Assembly: GCA_965285935.1 (NCBI GenBank)
Contig: OZ260667.1
Span: 12,152,001-12,216,000, forward strand
Origin: Ophelia neglecta
Lineage: Eukaryota
Direction: 5' to 3'
DNA length: 64,000 nt
In this document: positions 26,901-63,703 of the stretch, piece by piece
Layout: each line of letters opens with the position of its first letter
How positions within the stretch are numbered: position 1 is the first letter of the stretch
Made by a program: the position numbers and the translations under genes
Notes under the pieces: generated by a model
The model's input: only the letters and a program-made list of their open reading frames with translations
What the model was told of the DNA's origin: nothing
Databases searched by the model: none

Positions 26901-29900
26901 TTGATCATATAGGTAAGGCCTATTAAATATAATTGTCATCGGAGCAAGAATTAGCGGCTTGGGCTACACTATGTTTGTTTAACCTACCTGGATAGTCTAA
27001 GCCACTCATGAACCCTAGGACCTCAGTGTCAGTGATAAAAACCATCCTTGGATACGCAAAATAGTTAAAAAGATAACAATTGCGATATACACTGACATTT
27101 TGTCCGTTGGCGAAATTAAAATGCTTACACCGGTTGTTCGCATCGCAAGACGCCGGTTTATTACTGAATTATACATGACTACTGAAGTATGGTAATCATA
27201 TTCTTGCAGATTCTAGAATGTAATTATTCTTTTCTTATAAGAGTATAGAGAAATTATTCCTGTACTTTACCAGTGATTTTACCTTTTTCACTATTAAAGG
27301 TTGCTTATAAATGTATGACAAATATCAAGATACCTGTGAATTTGGACCACAGTCAGGGTTCTTAAAATGCTGATCTGATTATAATTAAGGTGCTCTGTTA
27401 AGGCATGTTATCTCACATTGAACGTGTACATTATGGCATAACGTTGGAGCCCTGAATATTGAAAGGTGGTGTTAATATAGAGGTGGTTTTTACTTTACTA
27501 GCTATAGAGAAACGAACGATGCTGGATGATGGTCGTCCGATGACATCAATGCATAATACACAAAGTGGGGAAAGTAAGGGGAGCACGTGTGCTCGGGAAG
27601 GCCAAGAAATGTAGCCGTAGGGGAGGTTTTTGTGAAGGCTGTCCAGCCCCAAGTTCTATCCAATATCTGGAAGCATATGAGGTGTACTTGAGGAGTACCT
27701 ATATACTCCGGGAATACTGTGAACATTTAAGAGCTATTATGATGTTGCTTATTTTTTATGATTTCGTTTAAAGTATCGTGGACACAGTGAGGCCTTCAGG
27801 TTTTATTGGGCACTAAAACCCATTAAATGATCAGCATGTTTGATACTGACTACCGAGAGTTGTCTTACCTGATCATTGAGTTGGGTTCGGTCACCTCGAA
27901 GTCCAGTTGTAGTGAGGATCCTCTTTGTATGGTGACGGTGGTAAAGTTACTCATGTCTACATTGTCCATGAAGTTGTCAATACGATAGCTTTCAGGGATA
28001 GGGCCACCCATACAAATCTAGGAACAGAACTAATTCGTTTTACCCGAATAATCATAATGGATGATTTAAGACCAAGTAACACTCTCCTAACCGTTCGCGA
28101 GTAAAATTCTTATTTCTAACTTCAAACCGCGTTTTGACTTTGAATTATTGCTAGTGTGTAATAAGACACTTAGTTAGGCATCGGAAACATTCAGGACCTT
28201 GGACCTACAGCACGTGTCTCCATCAGGGTCAGTGGCTGTTCCGCCCCAATTCACAGGAAGTTGATCAGCATCTATGTACTGAAGTAAGTGCTGTTTCCAA
28301 TTACCTTAATAAAATTGCGAAAAATCTTCTTAATTAGAAAAGCTGGTTATGTTTTGTTTGCAAATACTGTCACTTAGGGGAATTCAGCTACAATACTTAT
28401 TCAACTATTTCTAAGTTGGGTATCTCTACTATAATATATTATAATAAACAGTATTAAATAACTTTTATTCATTTTATCGAACCTTATAACCTTTAATCAT
28501 TGGATTTAGATATCACAAAATAAATTCTTATAAATCCGGTTAGAGGTGTCAGAAATATTGGTGAACTTACCACCGACCACCTGTATTTTGGAACGAGTGT
28601 ACTCACTAAGGAACGGCTTTGCCAAAGCATAGGCAACCGGGAAGATCTTAGGAGCTATGGGAAGAGTGTTTAAAAGAACAGGAAAATTATAAGGGTAAAG
28701 AGGAAAGTAAGGACAGTAGAGAGAGGGCACACAGGGTAGAGATGTACAGTAGGACATGAATTGGGTCGGGACGCTATGAGAAGTGGATTAGTATTGTGTG
28801 AGTCAAGACCTGAATTAAGACAAGTAATTAAACCTGAATGACGAAATGCATTCCCAATTCCCCCTGAATGACGAAATGCATTCCGAATTCCCCTGATTAA
28901 CAGAAACAAGGAATACTTCTGGAATGCAATAAAGAGAAATTGACGATATAATATGCTGATAAAGAGATAAGTAGGAATGCAGTATTTGGTGAAAGGTGAC
29001 ATAAAAAAAGTGTAAGCTGTACTATACTTTTAACCACCACAATAAACACCCCAGCCTTTACTACTTGCTCTACACTCACTGCCCAATACTTGTATTTTCC
29101 GCCGGGTATCTTCATGCAGAAATGCTTTGGCTAAGTTATATAATACTGGAAATATTTTTGGGGCTGGAAGAAATTTAACAGGCGTATGTGAAAAATAAAT
29201 ATAGAAACATTCATCAATAAAAAAAAAACACGAATGACATACTTTCTCAAAAGCATGAAGGATGAAATATGAAATAAAGTGGCAGCATGAAAAGTTGATA
29301 TACTACTTATCTGAACACATTTTAACAATGATATAGCTATGTGTTTTATATAGACACATGAATTGTAATTAAAAACGTTATTTTCAAAAAAAGAGCTACT
29401 CGAAGCCCTTACTACTATGATCAACATATAGATTGTTATCTGTTTAAATTAGAGCGAATGGCAAAATTAAAACCATTTTAATTATAAATTGCTATCATAC
29501 AAAGTATAGGCAAGCGGTATACCGTTAACGACATAGCAGGTTCTTAACGTCTCGGGGTAGTGAGCTTCAAGTAGTGCTAGTACTTCAGTGAATACTTCAA
29601 CCGCTGGATACAAATTTAAAAATAAAGGAAGAAGGTTTAGGCTTTCGTTAAAACAGCTTAAATCGCCTTTTATGCCCCCTAACTTAACATGTCGCGTATT
29701 AAAATTAAGTAATACTGCTCGCATCACGGCAAATTTGATCAATAAAGCATGTCCGTATATAAATCATCGGCAGTATGGAAAAAGGTTTCTATGCCTAAAA
29801 TGAAGCAAATGAAGAAAAATGTTGACAGATATCAGACCTGGTTTCCAAAGGTGTTTCATGCCTATTCCTTCCATGTCGAATATCATAACACACTGGTCAA

Positions 29901-32900
29901 TTCTACGGCCATTCTACAATCAAATATCATAACACACTGGTCTATTCTAAGGCCATTTTACAATTAAATATCATTACACACTGGTCTATCTTAAGGCCAT
30001 TCTATTTATATATTGTTGGCCTCTTAAAGAATAAGCACTATTTCAAGTGAAACTCGTTTTAAATTGTATGTCGGACTTCTTTTTTAATATTCTGGCAGAA
30101 ATCAGCAGTATATTTAAGGTTTCAAAAAAGACAAAATATGTAATGCTTTTAAGGCATGCTACTCTTACTGAAGGTATGGAGAAGCAAAGTACCTTCTTAG
30201 ATAATTCAGGAAATATATGCCGGAAGAGATGTTCCACCCAGTATGTTTTGTATTTGACAATTTCCTTCTTCGTTGTCGAAAACATCATTCCTGAAGAGAC
30301 AGGAGTGAATGGCTGTTATTGGACATGCTTAGTGCTCCACGTTTGTTTTTACTGGACATCATTATTATAATTAGGGGTGGTATATAATACTAACATTTGT
30401 GGGTTGGGAGTCGCTGGTATCGCTGGGCAAAAGTTGTGGGTTCGCGTCCCAGTCAGGGCACTGACTATATATATATTATTGTTACTGTTATTGTTATTGA
30501 AAATTCTAAGGTATTTGTTGAGTGGGCTGGGATGTGAACCCACAGCCCTTGCGGTAGAACTACCTAGCCCAGAGACTCTAGCCATTGTGCTGTAATGTTT
30601 TAATTCTTATAGATAGCTGTCACCCGTCTCTGAAGTATGACTGATATAGATAGATACTGTATGTCTTGATTGGTTGTATCAAGCGTACAACTCTTTGTTC
30701 TAATGTTCAACTCTTAAGTGATGTTGATATCTCTTTAACTCTATATTCAATCAATCATAACCATATTGTAAAGCTCAACTCTGAAGGGATATGAACCGCA
30801 TAAAAACTGTAAATTCAATAGATGATAACGATCGTGTCGATCATACAACTTAATTTACGACCATTTAATTCCAAATCGAACTTTCATAAGCCTCGTATTG
30901 TATCTGATGAATTGACGGAATTCACACTCCTGTCTCTATTGATAAGGATCAGTTCGATAGATGGAATCGAATGTGTTTGTGCTTTTGATAATAATCGTGT
31001 CGATCAATTGTATTGAAATTATTATGGAACTTGTAGTAAGTTAACAGAATATGCAAGTCCGAATTTCCTGATACTATTCTGTATATTGTGCAATCCCGCA
31101 TTTATGAGTTATAACGGGGCATGATATCGTACAATGCTTACACCTATATGTACGTATCAAGCATATATACCTTATATATGATGACATTGTCCTTACTTCC
31201 CTTTTTAATCATGGGTGCCTTTAGTAGGTCGTTGACAGTCGTCTTGCCACAATCAGCTGTACATGTTTTTCAGATAGGGACAAAAGGAATACTGTTTTAG
31301 TATTTTATGGGTATCAGACTGACCTTTGAGGTCGACAGTGCCCAATGTGTCTAACCAGATAGGGAATCCCTCCTTGTCGACCCCGTGGTACCCTCCAGGG
31401 TAATACTTGACCAGCACCTCAGGGAGGGGCCATTCTAGGATCCTATCAACTCCCATTTGTTTCCTCCACAATGCGTCCTGAAGATACAGTAATTATAATA
31501 AAAAAAGGAATTGCTAAACAAGAATATTATTTATCAAGAGTTGTCCATTAAAGCGTTCCGATATCACCGGGCACAGCCGCAAGCTCACATACACCTATCC
31601 CCAGCTGCTAAACTTTAAAATAAACTTGAAATGCAAATAATAATATTAAAGTATAAATTTTATATTTGCTAAGGGAAGTAGTTAACGGTTTTCCCAGATA
31701 GGAGTCAGAACACAAAACTGATGTCAGTGGTCATCGTGGGACAAAACGACATACATGTAGGCCCAAAGCCAGTCTATAGCGGTATAAGTTCTCAGAATGT
31801 ATTGACTACAGGTTTAATTGTATCAATAAACACAAGACCAATGTGGGGTTAAAGAATTGTTCAACATGAACACTTTAACAGCTTACATCATGAACAATTT
31901 AAAAACTGTTTCCTTCTTCATAGCATTGTTATAGCCACCCAATCAAATACATCTTCCTTATTTTTGGGGACTGGTGTAGGGAGGCCTGCTGCTGGTGGAA
32001 CCTGTTGATTGCTGGCCTATTTAATGGCCTGACTATTCCTGATTTATATTAATGATTGTGCTCGACTGCCGGGCATCCACAGCCGTTTTTTATATATCAG
32101 AGGATGCAGCATTAAAAAGAACGGTATGTTATTTGAATATTCATTTAGATAGTTAGTTATTTGGCTAGGACTGCTTCGACTTCACGACACGACTTTACGA
32201 AAATGTTATCATTTCGGACATAAGAAAGTTGCGCGTTATTAAAATTACAATATAGTGTTGCGTCAGGACAAACTGTCGAGTGAGGTATTATTGGCGAGCA
32301 TGCGGTGGTTTTATCTGTTACCATTGATCATCAACATTAACATTCGTATCAGCCTTGTTAAGCTATGTAGCCACCATTAGATGATTGTACCAATTAATCC
32401 AATTAGCTCACATTCTGAAGGTTTAATTGTTAATTGTTCATTTTGAATCAATTGTATTGTGAACTGGTCCTTTCATGACAGTTACTTAGAGTGACACATT
32501 GTCCCATGAGTATGAGATTGGAAGCTCACTACAACCCCGAGATGGTCAGCCAGGTTGAAGCAGTCGTTATCAGCTAATGCTATTCGCAAAAGACAGTGCG
32601 AGATGACGGATTATCTAGGTGATATCAAAGGTGCTCATTGAGATAACAGGGACATGCATGAACTTGTGAATGATTCGTTCCCTGTACCAATTCACTTGAC
32701 AGATATGGTTTGAACTATGAGTTATAGGAGATTTATATTTAGGGCCTCACGCATTTAAATTAAGAATAACAGTTAACATGCATGACAGTTTTGCGTCGTC
32801 ATTTCTCAAAGAGATAAATATATGACGTTATTTACTATTGTGCAGTACATGACTGAGAGCAGACGAGCTTATAATGTTGCACTGATTCTTAAAATGAAGA

Positions 32901-58277: not shown

Positions 58278-61200
58278 CTAGAACTTGGTTGAGTAGTACT
58301 GTAACTCCTTGCCTGCGTCTGGTGCGAGGATCTCCACCATGTAGGACAGCTTCTTGGCGTTCACCCAACTGTATGTGTTGTCAAACCTCAACACATCTAA
58401 AATAATATTACAGTATTACATAAAATTAGTGTAAAATCACAGTAGCTAATGTTTATCAAATCAGAATCTGAAGGCTTCCGCTTCTAACTTCCATTAAACA
58501 TTGAAATTGTGAGACACATTTAAGTAAAACTCAAGCCCCTTCCCGGGAATCAATATGGGATCGCTTTCTTGTAAATGCGTGTCAATCTCGGGTAACGTGG
58601 GCTTTAGGTTCTTAACATAGGCCCCTTCATACACAGGGCCTTTTAAAAATGAAAATCTCCCATATAGAGTCACTATATACTAAAATGACGTCCAAGGGGA
58701 TGAGGGTTATCTATTGGGGGAAGGAGGGGGGGGGGGGTATTTTTATATAGTATATAGTGACTCTATATGGGAGACTTTCAGTTTTAAAAGACCCTGTGAG
58801 TACATACTTATATCCTTCTCAGCTTAGAGGTTATCAGGGCTTTACAACTTCCTTGAAAGTACTTTTCTTAGGCTGGGGCCTATGAATTATGGAATGCGCG
58901 CATATATTTGTCCCTAGAACTGTCCGTTCCCCCGGACCACGTAGTGGCAATAATACCTACATGTGCCAATCTCAGGACATGTGACCTGTCCGCTCTCGGG
59001 GACCATGTGACTATTGACCCTCTCACTAGGTAAAACGACTTCCATCTCGGCCGCCTTCTGACGCTCATCCGCCGTGCGCCGAAAAACACCGAACCCAACG
59101 TCATTTCCTTCTGACTTAAACTGCCAGCTATAATGAAAGGAGCCAATGTTTACTCTGATATTTTGGTAAACAGTTGTAAGAAGTATCGGTAGACGTCGTA
59201 AAAAGGGAAGACCTGGGTGGTTGGATGAGTTGTGGAATAAATGTCCGCTATTCTCAAACTATTTTAGATGGAATATCTCTTGAGTATTTTTTCCTTTCTT
59301 TATTATCAACAACTTTGTAAAGATCGCCTTTAGTCCTATATATACCTGATCATTGAGTTGGGTTCGGTCACCTCGAAGTCCAGTTGTAGTGAGGATCCTC
59401 GTTGTATGGTGACGGTGGTAAAGTTACTCATGTCTACATTGTCCATGAAGTTGTCAATACGATAGCTTTCAGGGATAGGGCCACCCATACAAATCTAGGA
59501 ACAGAACTGATCGGTAACCTTAACGTTCGATAGAAAAACGGGAATATATATATTAATAAAATAAGTCCCCTCTGACCGTATTTAGTTATTCTATTCACAT
59601 GTGACACCCGTTACAACACCACGATAAGCAGGTGTCTGGACTTTTCGAGCGAGCGCCAGTTCGAGCGGTGGCTATACTGGTCGTTTCGAGCGAGGACATC
59701 GGACGTTTCGAGAGGGGCCATCAGACGTTTCGAGCGGGGCCTGTTCTAGTCGGTTATGATAGTAAACAGTTTCAGATACAACTTTTCGAGCGGTGCGACT
59801 GCACTTTTCGATCCCGACGTCGGCTGATACATGGCGGACATGACTACTAGGCATGGAACGACCTCTGGTGGCATATCCAAGAGGAGCTCCCAGTGATACG
59901 GACTGATTTGGAAATGAAAAAAGCGTAAAAATGCGCCAAACTTGTGCAATTTCGAAGAGAATAATCGTGGAAAAGGTAGCAAGTCACCGTATTTAAAAAA
60001 AAAAAAAAAATAAACGAGATTCAACCGTTCTAAACATCGTCGGTGAACTGCCTTTAGTTATCGCCAACCAGGGGGCTACAAGAGTCGAACTGAATATAAA
60101 GAGATTAGCAAACAGTAATACAGTAATATAGCTACATTATCAAGATTTATTAGCTTAACTCCTATAAAACGCCCCGCTCGAAAAGTTCCCCGCTCGAAAT
60201 GTCCCCGCACGAAACGACCCGGGACCGATAAACAACAATGATGAATGGTTCTTCACTGAAAAAGCTTATTTTGAAAACGTTCGCATCGACTATTAACAGG
60301 TGGCAGCAAAAGCTCGTCGCAACTTATTTTGTATAGACTGTCGACGAGGACTTGTCTAATAAGGGGCAGTTAACTGTTCCAACACTACAGTAAATATTTC
60401 CATCTAACAGCTGAAGTGGTAATAATTTGTTATAAAAAAATCTAGGAATATACCAGTTAAATCATGTGAAATAAGTTATTTGGCTATTGATAACTCTGCT
60501 TTGTCCTTAGGAGACATGATAATCCCATTTCCACTTACTGTTTCCAGGTTCCTTCACCAAACACCGCTCCATTACATTAATAGACCAACCATACGTTGGC
60601 TTCTAGAATGTAACGTCTTTATATTTATCTAATTTACTATTTAGTAACTAGATATATTAGTTAACATTACATGTGGCAATGTGTATGTATGATTATCCGC
60701 ACGTTATATTTGATATCTAGTTGCGAGTTGGATTGTTGTTCTGCACTATGCGCATGTATGTATGCTTGTATGAAATCTGTCCACTCGCTCTGTGTACTTT
60801 GGGAAATAGATGTATCGTTTCTTTAGCCAATAAACTCATAAGATAACTTTTTTTTTGACGTTTCAAATTTTTTTGATTTAATTTGATACACATTTTAATT
60901 TGTACTTATAAAGCTCAATTAGCACTAAAGAGTAACACAATAGCCTTTAGTACTTTAGGGATCCAAGTTAATAAGGCTTTTCGGTTATTTTCATCAAACA
61001 ACTGTCTCCTAACTTTGATTTGGAGAAATAGTCCAGCCAGATTATTATCTTCTCCATGCAACTTGGATCCCACCCAACATGTTCCAGTATTTCTAAAATA
61101 AATGGTCTATTTGGGCATAATATGTCGATAGGTACACACACCCCCTCGCCCCAACCTCATTTTCCAACATTTGTTAAGGACATTAAGGTGCGAGGTGTCA

Positions 61201-63078
61201 AACCCTGGATTGTACTGTGGCCTACTCGTTCACTGTTTTCTTTGAATTCCTTGCTATGATTTTTGTCGGCCACTAGAGGTGGCATAAATATCATCAGCTG
61301 AAATGTTGACACTTTTGGACACGAGTATTGTTTTAACCAAGAGGAAATGTATGACTCATTTGTGAAGCTATGCTGATAGTTTTAATATTACCATTCGGTT
61401 GGGAAACAGGAGCAAGTAAGTACCTTAGACCGACAGCATGTGTCACCATCAGGGTCAGTGGCCGTGCCGCCCCAATTCACAGGAAGTTGGTCGGCATCTA
61501 TATACTGGAGTAGGTGCTCTTTCCAATTGCCTTAATAATTGAAAAACAATCGTTAGTAAGAAACTTTGGTTATGTTTTGTGGGTAAATATATTATTAGAT
61601 GAATCCAAATAATAAACATAAGCTTGAAATAATGTTCCTTGACAGTATTTATTTTATTTTCGTAGTTCTGCCATCAAGTTTCAAGAAAAGATTTTTTTTT
61701 TTATTCCATGTCATTTGGAAAAGCTATAATATTTACTTTAAACGAAATTCTTAAAATTTCGGTTAGGATTGCGAGCAGTATTGGCGAACTTACCTCCTAC
61801 AACCTGTATTTTAGTGCGCGTGTATTCACTAAGGAACGGCTTTGCTAAAGCATAGGCAATCGGGAAGATCTTGGGCGCTATGGGAAGAGAGAGTTAGAGA
61901 GTTTGAAAGATAAGAAAGAGAATCAGGATAAGGATGAAGTTAGGACAATGAACATCGGACATATAGGATACACTGGCTGTTCCACATAAAGACGTACATT
62001 GGCTGACTAGGTAAATTCTGGTACGATAACTAGTGTATGGTCATTTAGTAATACGTCGGTAATAGTAGTAATAAACCAAAAGACCTTAATGTCATGCAAA
62101 TTCAACTGAATAAATTATAACAATTATGAACTAATGGGTGGAATGGTAGGTTTTTAGGATTAAGAGACCATTGCGCTTAAAAAACTATTGATTGCTTTTC
62201 AAAGGACTAAAAACGGCTTCAAAAATTATCCAAGCCTTCACTACTCCCTCTACATTCACTGCCCAATACTTGTATTTTCCGCCGGGTATCTACCTTCATG
62301 CAAAAATACATTAGTTTCTATAATACTGGGAAAAATTTTGGCTGGAAAAAGGGCAAAATATACATGGAAAAGTATTCAATGTTAAAATCAATGATGTCAA
62401 AATTTTACAAATGCGAGAAAGATGAAAAAGATGACAACATAGGGACATAGACGGCCAATCATTATACATCAGTAGGCACGTATACACCAATGTAATAAAT
62501 AATTATGATAATAGCAATCTCCTTAATATGAGTACTGTCTCTAGAAAATATTAACAATGATCAAAGAACAACTTATGTGGAAAGCTGGCAAATTGGCAAA
62601 ATAAATTTTACCATTCTAAACTTATAAACAAACGTAAGACCATGAAATTAAGTTTAATTTGCTCGATATCTCAAAAGTGTACCATTAATAACAAAGCAAA
62701 TCCTCAATGTCTCGGGGTAGTGAGCTTCAAGCACAGCAAGTACCTCGGTCAATACTTCAACCGCTGGATGAAAATTAAAAAACAAACATGAGTAGTCTAA
62801 TATTTAAATTAAAACAACTAAAATACACTTCCAGTCAATTAATAGTTCATGCATTGATGTGAAATATTTTATACATGCGGTAGCATTGCAAAGTTTATAT
62901 GATTAACATTAAGTATTAAGAGGGAATGTATTGAAGCTTGTACGGATGAAAAGGTACAACTATAATGCAATAAATCAAAAACTATATTGAAGGAAAGCAG
63001 ACCTGGTTTCCAAAGGTGTTTCATGCCTATTCCTTCCATGTCGAATATCATAACACACTGGTCAATTCTACGGCCATT
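58278..63078 (-). CDS. SEC14L2: SEC14-like protein 2 family, tandem paralog B; exons 6-12 (5' exons beyond window)
   Basis: Exons 63078-63003, 62763-62683, 61877-61794, 61530-61424, 59494-59346, 59127-58961 and 58396-58278 (stop TAG). Lengths and phases are identical to paralog A (76, 81, 84, 107, 149, 167, 119 nt) with no disablements. Confidence 0.93.
58630..58802. mobile_element. MITE with ~50-bp TIRs, TA-flanked (intron 11 of paralog B)
   Basis: cacagggccttttaaaaatgaaaatctcccatatagagtcactatatacta ... tagtatatagtgactctatatgggagactttcagttttaaaagaccctgtg. Confidence 0.85.
59631..60226. mobile_element. non-autonomous DNA transposon with GG..CC ends, subterminal ttcgagcg repeats and an 8-bp TSD (Merlin/MULE-like)
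   Basis: Left arm ggtgtctggacttttcgagcg..., right arm ...cgctcgaaaagt...cccgggacc; flanks gataagca (59623-59630) and gataaaca (60227-60234). Absent from the 180-bp equivalent intron of paralog A. Confidence 0.75.
62260..62341 (-). pseudogene. disrupted exon 8a of SEC14L paralog B
   Basis: Homologous to 29080-29163 with AG/GT retained, but 82 nt long, with TAG in the homologous frame (PKFFPVL*) and indels. Confidence 0.8.
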
Positions 63079-63477
63079 CTACAATCAAATATCATAACAC
63101 ACTGGTCAACTCTACGGCCATTCTACAATCAAATATCATAACACACTGCTCAACTCTACGGCCATTCTACAATCAAATATCATAACACACTGGTCAACTC
63201 TACGGCCATTCTACAATCAAATATCATAACACACTGGTCAACTCTACGGCCATTCTACAATCAAATATCATAACACACTGGTCAACTCTACGGCCATTCT
63301 ACAATCAAATATCATAACACACTGGTCAACTCTACGGCCATTCTACAATCAAATATCATAACACACTGGTCAACTCTACGACCATTCTACAATCAAATAT
63401 TATAACACACTGGTCTATTCTAAGGCCATTTTACAATTAAATATCATAACACACTGGTCAACTCTACGGCCATTCTA
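63048..63477. repeat. 44-bp tandem array (~10 copies) of the exon 6 acceptor and exon start, paralog B
   Basis: Unit tcataacacactggtcaactctacggccattctacaatcaaata. Confidence 0.95.
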
Positions 63478-63703
63478 AACTCAATTCAAAATATACATGA
63501 ACCATAACCAGATATATACAGAAAATATAGAATAAACGTTGTGGTCAGGATGTCAGCACTAGGAAAGCCCTCTGGTAAACATTAAATTACAATAAACGAA
63601 AAGGTAAAATGGTAACCGATCATACCACCTATAAATTTTTACTGTTTTAAATAAAGAAACAACAATCACAAAAAATATTAAATTAATAAATTGCATGAAT
63701 TAC

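What the first reader, a model, noticed from the sequence alone, without database searches (positions are those of the whole stretch)
28571..29163. Hidden duplicate exon 8: probable mutually exclusive splicing of the Sec14 lipid-pocket gate helix
Seen: intron 7 of paralog A contains an intact 84-nt, phase 1-1 exon (29163-29080; ttcttccag / gtgagt) encoding [29 protein letters not shown]. It lies just upstream of exon 8b, which encodes [29 protein letters not shown]. The nucleotide sequences are strongly diverged while frame, length and family motif are kept, which suggests selection on both. Established: in CRAL-TRIO/Sec14 proteins this segment forms the mobile amphipathic lid that opens and closes the ligand cavity. 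Inference: one gene makes two lipid-transfer isoforms with swappable lids (P/A, S/H, Y/D and S/R changes alter charge and helix kink), possibly tuning ligand or membrane specificity. The ORF track does not show this exon, and I know of no such described switch in this family.
Basis: partly seen in the sequence, partly recalled or inferred. Interest (0 to 1): 0.85.

Follow-up and report, generated by a model that had tools for sequence, protein, structure and literature searches.

The report
Duplicated gate-helix exon in SEC14-like gene
An invertebrate lipid-transfer gene (SEC14-like 2 type) carries two intact, selectively maintained copies of the small exon that builds the lid over its lipid pocket, so it can very probably make two proteins with different lids, although no RNA data exist to show that both are used.

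Summary
On the minus strand, 29163-29080 (8a) and 28654-28571 (8b) are two 84-nt, phase 1-1 exons with normal AG/GT sites, lying between exon 7 and exon 9 of a SEC14L2-like (CRAL-TRIO + GOLD) gene.

Both copies show purifying selection:
- Nucleotide identity is 57%, with differences of 7/4/23 at codon positions 1/2/3.
- Both are equally distant in protein from outgroup exons.
- Each alone passes the Pfam CRAL_TRIO threshold.
- A neutral relic would stay intact with P < 0.01.

The exon encodes the Sec14 "helical gate" (human SEC14L2 residues 195-221, KPFL hinge).

The duplication is older than the tandem gene duplication in this window. Paralog B keeps 8b and only a broken 82-nt remnant of 8a. 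About 30 loci from other animals have a single lid exon.

No RNA run exists for this organism, so either/or splicing remains an inference. It is strengthened by RefSeq same-length isoform pairs at exons 5, 6 and 7 of SEC14L2-like genes in a chiton, bivalves, a limpet and an annelid; the chiton pair is confirmed here as tandem exons. The switch type is therefore already annotated in the family, while a lid-exon pair was not seen elsewhere.

Earlier notes of this scan report other either/or exon clusters in this genome.

The parts
29523..29603 (-). Exon 7 of gene A (81 nt, phase 1-1). It encodes the ...EAHYPETL...VVN strand and helix just before the lid and donates the first base of the Ala codon completed by 8a or 8b.
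   Evidence: Pfam CRAL_TRIO positions 79-103
29080..29163 (-). Exon 8a: upstream copy of the lid (helical gate) exon, 84 nt, phase 1-1, acceptor ttcttccag, donor gtgagt. It keeps family-consensus Asn9, Asp18, Leu26 and the junction Ser; its hinge motif is KAFLH.
   Evidence: no variant in three DNA runs
28655..29079 (-). 425-nt intron between 8a and 8b. It holds a length-polymorphic 30-nt tandem repeat (28826-28885). The first ~30 nt after the 8a donor are unusually conserved with paralog B.
28571..28654 (-). Exon 8b: downstream copy of the lid exon, 84 nt, phase 1-1, long pyrimidine tract, donor gtaagt. Its hinge is KPFLS and it has derived Ala9, Tyr18, Val26 and junction Gly. It is the type kept by paralog B and by the closest relative L013.
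28198..28304 (-). Exon 9 (NWKQHLL...), the common acceptor for 8a or 8b.
29133..29148 (-). Arm 1 (inside exon 8a) of the only 15/16-complementary pair in the 1.4-kb region; a candidate RNA pairing element.
28449..28464 (-). Arm 2 (intron between 8b and exon 9) of that pair. Pairing would loop out 8b.
   Evidence: not present in paralog B
62260..62341 (-). Paralog B: decayed remnant of 8a. It is 82 nt, has a stop in the homologous frame and frameshifts in its 5' half. Its 3' half plus donor are ~100% identical to A. It would introduce a premature stop if spliced in.
   Evidence: the B sequence is confirmed by loose ends of contigs in three runs
61794..61877 (-). Paralog B: intact exon 8b (25/27 residues identical to A's 8b).

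Best explanation
Gene A (about 37.1 to 23.9 kb, minus strand) is an intact SEC14L2-type lipid-transfer gene. Its exon 8 encodes the gate helix, the KPFL hinge and the following strand of the CRAL-TRIO pocket. This exon was tandemly duplicated long ago. Both copies have since been kept as coding exons and are most probably used one at a time (exon 7 to 8a to 9, or exon 7 to 8b to 9). That would give two isoforms that differ at 8 of 29 lid residues. The differences include the hinge (KAFLH in 8a, KPFLS in 8b) and an Asp18/Arg21 pair in 8a against Tyr18/Ser21 in 8b. Shown: the anatomy, selection on both copies, the age of the duplication, the identity of the segment, and either/or isoform pairs at neighbouring exons of the family in other animals. 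Inferred: that 8a is spliced at all today, that use is exclusive, that 8b is the default (it is the copy retained by B and L013 and has higher GC3), and that the swap changes gate dynamics or ligand and membrane preference. A possible, unproven control element is a 16-nt pairing between 8a and the intron downstream of 8b.
For: Anatomy. Selection: 57% nucleotide identity, with differences of 7/4/23 at codon positions 1/2/3; dN 0.22 with dS saturated. 8a and 8b each differ from the outgroup exon of L012 at 8 of 27 residues, with 3 unique changes each, so their protein rates are equal. In a neutral simulation, an intact frame, intact AG/GT and no indel occur with P = 0.005 at t = 0.35 and 0.0001 at t = 0.7, with 14-20 amino-acid changes expected against 3-4 observed. 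Pfam CRAL_TRIO scores are 23.7 and 24.9 bits. 8a matches the family consensus at positions where 8b is derived. Age: B carries an 8a remnant at the homologous place; A-B dS is 0.7-1.1 in exons 7-9; L013 shares 8b's derived states. Gate identity: SEC14L2 residues 195-221, Sec14 gate residues 229KPFLD233 (PMC3057712), and helix 197-208 plus strand 217-219 in the model of homologue P0136. Precedent: same-length RefSeq isoform pairs confined to one exon in Liolophura, Mercenaria, Dreissena, Patella, Mytilus and Owenia, with tandem exons 6a/6b seen in the Liolophura genome. There is no polymorphism in 8a or 8b, against 32 SNPs and 4 indels in 1.7 kb of intron.
Against: There is no transcript evidence: the only runs holding the locus are three DNA runs of one sample. 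Double inclusion or double skipping would also keep the frame, and the 425-nt intron gives no steric exclusion. 8a was lost in paralog B and is absent from L013 and about 30 other loci, so it is dispensable in some contexts. 8a's GC3 (0.30) has drifted towards intron composition. Zero variants in 84 nt is not significant on its own (P about 0.2). The RNA pairing has no comparative support.
Confidence: 0.68

Rival explanations
1. 8a is a silent relic. It was a working alternative exon for most of its history but is no longer spliced in gene A, as already happened in paralog B, and it is intact only because the loss of use is recent.
For: B's copy is broken. L013 lacks it. 8a has low GC3. There is no RNA evidence.
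Against: A's copy has no disabling change and both splice sites are as good as those of constitutive exons. Protein-level divergence is no greater than 8b's. Intactness under neutrality is improbable unless the silent period is very short. No variants were seen in three runs.
Confidence: 0.12
2. Use is not exclusive: 8a is an ordinary cassette exon that is added in front of 8b (a tandem 56-residue lid), or both can be skipped. All four combinations keep the frame.
For: Both exons are 84 nt and phase 1-1. The intron between them is 425 nt with normal sites, so 8a-8b splicing is mechanically possible.
Against: None of 115 family members compared has two gate segments. The exon spans a helix and a core strand of the fold. 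Family precedents are same-length substitutions, not insertions. The structural effect of a double lid was not modelled, because the joined model was left out.
Confidence: 0.08
3. The conserved 3' half of 8a with its donor flank is kept for an RNA-level role (splicing decoy or regulatory element), and the coding look of 8a is secondary.
For: A stretch of about 75 nt (29122-29050) is ~100% identical between A and B even though B's copy cannot code. 8a carries the only 15/16 pairing in the region.
Against: Patchy gene conversion between A and B (exon 6 dS 0, exon 10 dS 0.03) explains the identical patch. The codon-position pattern and consensus residues along the whole of 8a show protein-level selection.
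Confidence: 0.05

Closest known systems
RefSeq same-length isoform pairs of SEC14-like protein 2 genes in Lophotrochozoa: Liolophura sinensis X1/X2, Mercenaria X1/X2, Dreissena X1/X2 and Patella caerulea (exon 6); Mytilus edulis X4/X7 and M. galloprovincialis (exon 7); Owenia fusiformis (exon 5)
   Same: Same gene family and same exon structure. A single small CRAL-TRIO pocket exon is duplicated in tandem, and the isoforms differ only in that exon and have equal length. The tandem 6a/6b arrangement was verified in the chiton genome.
   Different: Those pairs affect exons 5-7 (pocket wall and floor), not the lid exon. The chiton copies are only ~80 nt apart, so steric exclusion is possible, whereas here the gap is 425 nt. 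Those isoforms are annotated models; here there is no transcript evidence at all.
Tandem duplicated exon substitution, i.e. mutually exclusive exons in general (reviews PMC9741552, PMC9013439)
   Same: Adjacent homologous exons of equal length and phase, both under purifying selection, of ancient origin, and swapping a structurally equivalent segment.
   Different: Exclusivity and its mechanism are unproven here. Frame-based (NMD) and steric mechanisms do not apply.
Sec14 helical gate (A10/T4) and gate-dynamics variants such as Sfh1* (PMC3057712)
   Same: The same structural element. The KPFL hinge shows the largest opening motion, and altered gate dynamics change phospholipid exchange activity.
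   Different: Those are yeast PITPs studied with engineered point mutations. Here a metazoan SEC14L2-type gene would swap the whole gate by splicing. No lipid-binding data exist for it.
Human SEC14L2 (supernatant protein factor / TAP; PDB 1OLM, 1O6U, 4OMJ)
   Same: CRAL-TRIO plus GOLD architecture. Exon 8 aligns without gaps to residues 195-221.
   Different: Roughly 45-60% identity per exon. No lid-exon duplication was seen in the vertebrate proteins compared.

Membership tests
Mutually exclusive exon pair from tandem exon duplication | Two adjacent homologous exons in the same intron-exon context | tested here: met
   8a and 8b are 425 nt apart between exons 7 and 9, with 20/27 residues identical
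Mutually exclusive exon pair from tandem exon duplication | Same length and phase, with canonical splice sites on both | tested here: met
   84 nt each, phase 1-1, AG/GT, pyrimidine tracts 14/20 and 15/20
Mutually exclusive exon pair from tandem exon duplication | Purifying selection on both copies | tested here: met
   Codon-position differences 7/4/23, equal protein distance to outgroups, neutral retention P <= 0.005
Mutually exclusive exon pair from tandem exon duplication | Mature transcripts contain exactly one of the two | not testable with these tools
   No RNA run holds the locus; only three DNA runs do
Mutually exclusive exon pair from tandem exon duplication | A mechanism enforcing exclusivity (steric, frame/NMD, incompatible spliceosomes, competing RNA structure) | tested here: inconclusive
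   Steric and frame mechanisms are not met (425-nt intron; 84 nt keeps the frame), and both copies are GT-AG. There is one candidate 15/16 pairing between 8a and the downstream intron (3% of simulations have any such pair, 0.7% one touching 8a) without comparative support
SEC14L2/3/4-type lipid-transfer protein (CRAL_TRIO_N + CRAL_TRIO + GOLD) | CRAL_TRIO domain | tested here: met
   Exons 7, 8a, 8b and 9 hit PF00650 at successive profile positions 79-153. Exon 8 hits PDB SEC14L2/3/4 chains
SEC14L2/3/4-type lipid-transfer protein (CRAL_TRIO_N + CRAL_TRIO + GOLD) | C-terminal GOLD domain and N-terminal CRAL_TRIO_N | tested here: inconclusive
   Exons 2-4 and 10-12 align colinearly with full-length homologues that carry PF03765 and PF13897. 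Single exons do not reach Pfam thresholds, and the joined protein was not built
SEC14L2/3/4-type lipid-transfer protein (CRAL_TRIO_N + CRAL_TRIO + GOLD) | Binds and transfers a hydrophobic ligand | not testable with these tools
   Needs recombinant protein
Sec14-fold helical gate segment | Corresponds to the gate helix and the KPFL hinge that cover the pocket | tested here: met
   Gap-free alignment to SEC14L2 residues 195-221. The K-P/A-F-L motif matches Sec14 229KPFLD233 (PMC3057712). The model of P0136 has helix 197-208, helix 211-215 and strand 217-219 within the exon's span

The most novel reading that the evidence does not exclude
SEC14L2-type genes of spiralian invertebrates repeatedly diversify their lipid pocket by either/or exons (exons 5, 6 and 7 in other species). 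In this lineage the gate helix itself is the swappable module. 8a replaces the hinge proline/histidine with alanine, which none of 115 relatives has, and 8b replaces a conserved acidic residue with tyrosine, also unique. One gene would then make a fast-gate and a slow-gate, or differently targeted, lipid carrier. Exon choice would be steered by pairing of 8a with the intron downstream of 8b.
Probability: 0.3. Interest if true: 0.65.

Novelty: new variant of a known kind. Interest (0 to 1): 0.45.

Why it matters
The gate helix controls entry and exit of the ligand in every Sec14-fold protein, and how gate sequence sets exchange kinetics and ligand choice is still studied with engineered mutants. 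A gene that naturally carries two selected versions of the whole gate offers a ready comparison of two isoforms that are identical outside 29 residues. Together with the annotated exon 5/6/7 pairs in molluscs and an annelid, it suggests that either/or splicing is a recurrent and, in the literature I could search, undescribed way of diversifying this lipid-transfer family. The decay of 8a in the tandem paralog also illustrates the trade-off between gene duplication and alternative splicing.

Tried and rejected
Laying them could only check the assembly and polymorphism.
- Direct search for 8a-type exon fragments in the 5.8-billion protein set found three short ORFs, none of 8a type. One of them (P0152) sits on an 88-kb contig whose DNA could not be served.
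- An exon-10 search added only L015, which has no exon 8 within reach, and L016.
- P0195 turned out to be an intronless copy, and P0286 was not on record.
- A scan of metagenome contigs gave 25 host-derived loci, all with a single lid exon.
- Seven other SEC14-like loci of the same genome have one lid exon each.
- RNAduplex-style energy scans were abandoned because of time-outs and uninformative long interior loops. They were replaced by an explicit count of 15/16 helices against Markov simulations.
- Rejected: 8a arising by recent duplication of an 8b-type exon. That would need reversion to the family consensus at four positions, at least six nucleotide changes.
- Rejected: 8a copied from another paralog. 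No paralog in the genome is more than 52% identical to it.
- Literature searches for such a switch in Sec14/CRAL-TRIO proteins found nothing relevant.
- Left out by rule: building, searching or folding the joined (spliced) isoforms. All searches were exon by exon, by reference.

Full report
**Observation**

Reading the minus strand confirms two 84-nt exons. 8a lies at 29163-29080 (acceptor ttcttccag, donor gtgagt) and 8b at 28654-28571 (acceptor cccatag, donor gtaagt). Both enter and leave in phase 1. Exon 7 (29603-29523, 81 nt) supplies the first base of the Ala codon. Exon 9 (28304-28198) supplies the last two bases of the junction codon, which is Ser after 8a and Gly after 8b. The window has no N runs.

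**The gene**

Exon-by-exon comparison with full-length homologues places exons 2 to 12 of an apparently intact SEC14L2-type gene (gene A) from about 37.1 kb to 23.9 kb on the minus strand.
- Exons 7, 8a, 8b and 9 hit Pfam CRAL_TRIO at successive profile positions.
- 8a (23.7 bits) and 8b (24.9 bits) each exceed the 22.6-bit family threshold on their own.
- A tandem paralog, gene B, occupies about 63.1-58.3 kb on the same strand.
- The window is contig 12, 12.152-12.216 Mb, of a 762-Mb assembly.
- The closest named proteins are gastropod, bivalve and annelid SEC14-like 2 proteins at roughly 50-60% identity per exon. I cannot name the organism.

**Is 8a a real coding exon?**

- 8a and 8b are 57% identical in nucleotides, but the differences fall 7/4/23 on codon positions 1/2/3. 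dN is 0.22 and dS is saturated.
- Against the single lid exon of outgroup loci (L012, L016, L017), 8a is as close in protein as 8b: 19/27 and 19/27 residues against L012, and 18/27 and 17/27 against L017. With L012 as reference, each copy has three unique replacements.
- Against 115 family members, 8a keeps the consensus where 8b is derived (Asn9, Asp18, Leu26) and 8b keeps it where 8a is derived (Ala7, Pro13, Ser16). Each has one residue seen in no relative: Ala13 in 8a and Tyr18 in 8b. 8a is up to 81% identical to vertebrate lids.
- A neutral simulation gives P = 0.005 (t = 0.35 substitutions per site) or 0.0001 (t = 0.7) for keeping an open frame, AG/GT and no indel. It predicts 14-20 amino-acid changes where 3-4 are seen.
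- Contigs of three DNA runs reproduce both exons exactly and show no variant in any exon of the stretch except two in exon 10. The 1.7 kb of intron carry 32 SNPs and 4 indels. For 8a alone this is not significant (P about 0.2).
- I conclude that 8a has been under protein-level purifying selection for essentially its whole history.

**Age and distribution**

- Gene B has an intact 8b (25/27 residues identical) and, at the homologous place, an 82-nt remnant of 8a (62341-62260). The remnant has a stop in the homologous frame and shifted frames in its 5' half, and it would cause a premature stop if spliced in. Its sequence is confirmed by contig ends in all three runs. The exon duplication therefore predates the gene duplication, whose dS in exons 7-9 is 0.7-1.1.
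- The remnant's 3' half, its donor and ~30 nt of intron are almost identical to A. Exon 6 (dS 0) and exon 10 (99.4% identity over 166 nt) show patchy gene conversion between A and B, so conversion is the likeliest cause. An RNA-level role cannot be excluded.
- The closest relative found (L013, an ENA contig; exon 4 is 84% identical) has a compact gene with one lid exon of 8b type. It shares 8b's derived Ala9, Tyr18, Val26 and junction Gly, and it has no trace of 8a in its 217-nt intron 7. The most parsimonious reading is that the duplication predates that split (A-L013 dS above 1.2 or saturated) and that 8a was later lost there.
- More distant loci have a single lid exon of ancestral type: L012/L016, L014/L017, the chiton gene L019 and 25 host-derived metagenome contigs. 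So do seven other SEC14-like loci of this genome.
The selection evidence within the genome outweighs that.

**What the exon encodes**

8a aligns without gaps to human SEC14L2 residues 195-221 (PDB 1OLM, 1O6U, 4OMJ) and to SEC14L3 and SEC14L4. It contains the K-P-F-L motif. In yeast Sec14 this motif (229KPFLD233) is the part of the A10/T4 helical gate that moves most on opening (PMC3057712; gate concept also in PMC7385082). An AlphaFold model of homologue P0136 (mean pLDDT 83) places a 12-residue helix (197-208), a short helix (211-215) and a strand (217-219) within the exon's span.

The hinge change (KAFLH against KPFLS) and the Asp18-Arg21 against Tyr18-Ser21 pair are the most conspicuous differences.

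**Is the use mutually exclusive?**

This could not be tested.
- Nothing in the sequence enforces exclusion. The intervening intron is 425 nt, both exons keep the frame, and both are GT-AG with sites comparable to constitutive exons.
- The only 15/16-complementary pair in the 1.4-kb region joins exon 8a (29148-29133) to the intron between 8b and exon 9 (28464-28449). Pairing there would loop out 8b. Of first-order Markov simulations, 3% have any such helix and 0.7% have one touching 8a. This is a post-hoc observation, it is AU-rich, and it is absent from B. I list it only as a candidate.

Indirect support comes from the family. In 90%-identity clusters of SEC14-like 2 proteins I found same-length isoform pairs whose differences are confined to one exon:
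- exon 6 in Liolophura sinensis, Mercenaria mercenaria, Dreissena polymorpha and Patella caerulea;
- exon 7 in Mytilus edulis and M. galloprovincialis;
- exon 5 in Owenia fusiformis.

In the Liolophura genome the two exon-6 versions lie in tandem about 80 nt apart, and the gene has the same exon structure as gene A. Either/or exons are therefore a recurrent feature of this family in spiralians. A functional Sec14 fold also has room for one gate segment only: none of the 115 relatives has two.

**Mechanism proposed**

One pre-mRNA joins exon 7 to either 8a or 8b and then to exon 9, giving two lipid-transfer proteins that differ only in gate helix, hinge and adjoining strand. 8b is probably the default form. 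It is the type retained in B and L013, it has the stronger pyrimidine tract and donor, and its GC3 is 0.56 against 0.30 for 8a. 8a would be a regulated alternative. After the gene duplication, B specialised on 8b and let 8a decay while A kept both. The functional consequence (gate kinetics, ligand or membrane preference) is inference from what is known of the Sec14 gate.

**Novelty**

Full-text searches found no description of mutually exclusive exons in Sec14/CRAL-TRIO genes, but the RefSeq models above show the phenomenon at neighbouring exons. The present case is a new variant (the lid exon) of a known kind. Earlier notes of this scan record other candidate either/or exon clusters in the same genome, in B56 and CASTOR. 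They add context only.

By rule I did not build, search or fold a joined spliced protein. All searches used single exons by reference, or alignments with one exon per row. The two isoforms and the hypothetical double-lid product were therefore not modelled.

Noticed in passing
window 29871-30002 (gene A) and 63041-63484 (gene B), minus strand: A 44-nt minisatellite made of the first 44 nt of exon 6 (encoding [13 protein letters not shown]). Each upstream unit ends in ...TTGTAG, which supplies an acceptor-like AG for the next unit. There are 3 units in A (the last is the real exon start at 29913) and about 10 in B. 44 is not a multiple of 3. RefSeq isoforms of Patella, Liolophura, Mercenaria and Dreissena differ in exactly this exon-6 segment.
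   Followed up: partly
window 27866-28031 vs 59343-59508; 29836-29886 vs 63001-63051: Patchy gene conversion between the tandem paralogs. Exon 10 is 99.4% identical over 166 nt and exon 6 is identical in its coding part (dS 0), while exons 7, 8b and 9 have dS 0.7-1.1 and the introns are unalignable.
   Followed up: partly
window 28826-28885: A 30-nt tandem repeat in the 8a-8b intron is length-polymorphic: a contig of run X2 lacks one unit. A very divergent haplotype (8 SNPs in 164 nt) covers 28646-28809, just upstream of 8b.
   Followed up: no
window 29003-29369: A 366-nt stretch around exon 8a shows no SNP in any of the three runs' contigs, whereas neighbouring intron has one about every 50 nt. 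This could be constraint or haplotype chance.
   Followed up: no
L018:6001-7197: An intronless 398-residue SEC14L2-like gene on a 699-kb ENA contig of another organism; a probable retrocopy that is still open.
   Followed up: no
L019:9316-9561 (Liolophura sinensis, CM072729.1): Tandem exon 6a/6b about 80 nt apart, corresponding to RefSeq isoforms X1 and X2. The short spacer would allow steric exclusion.
   Followed up: partly
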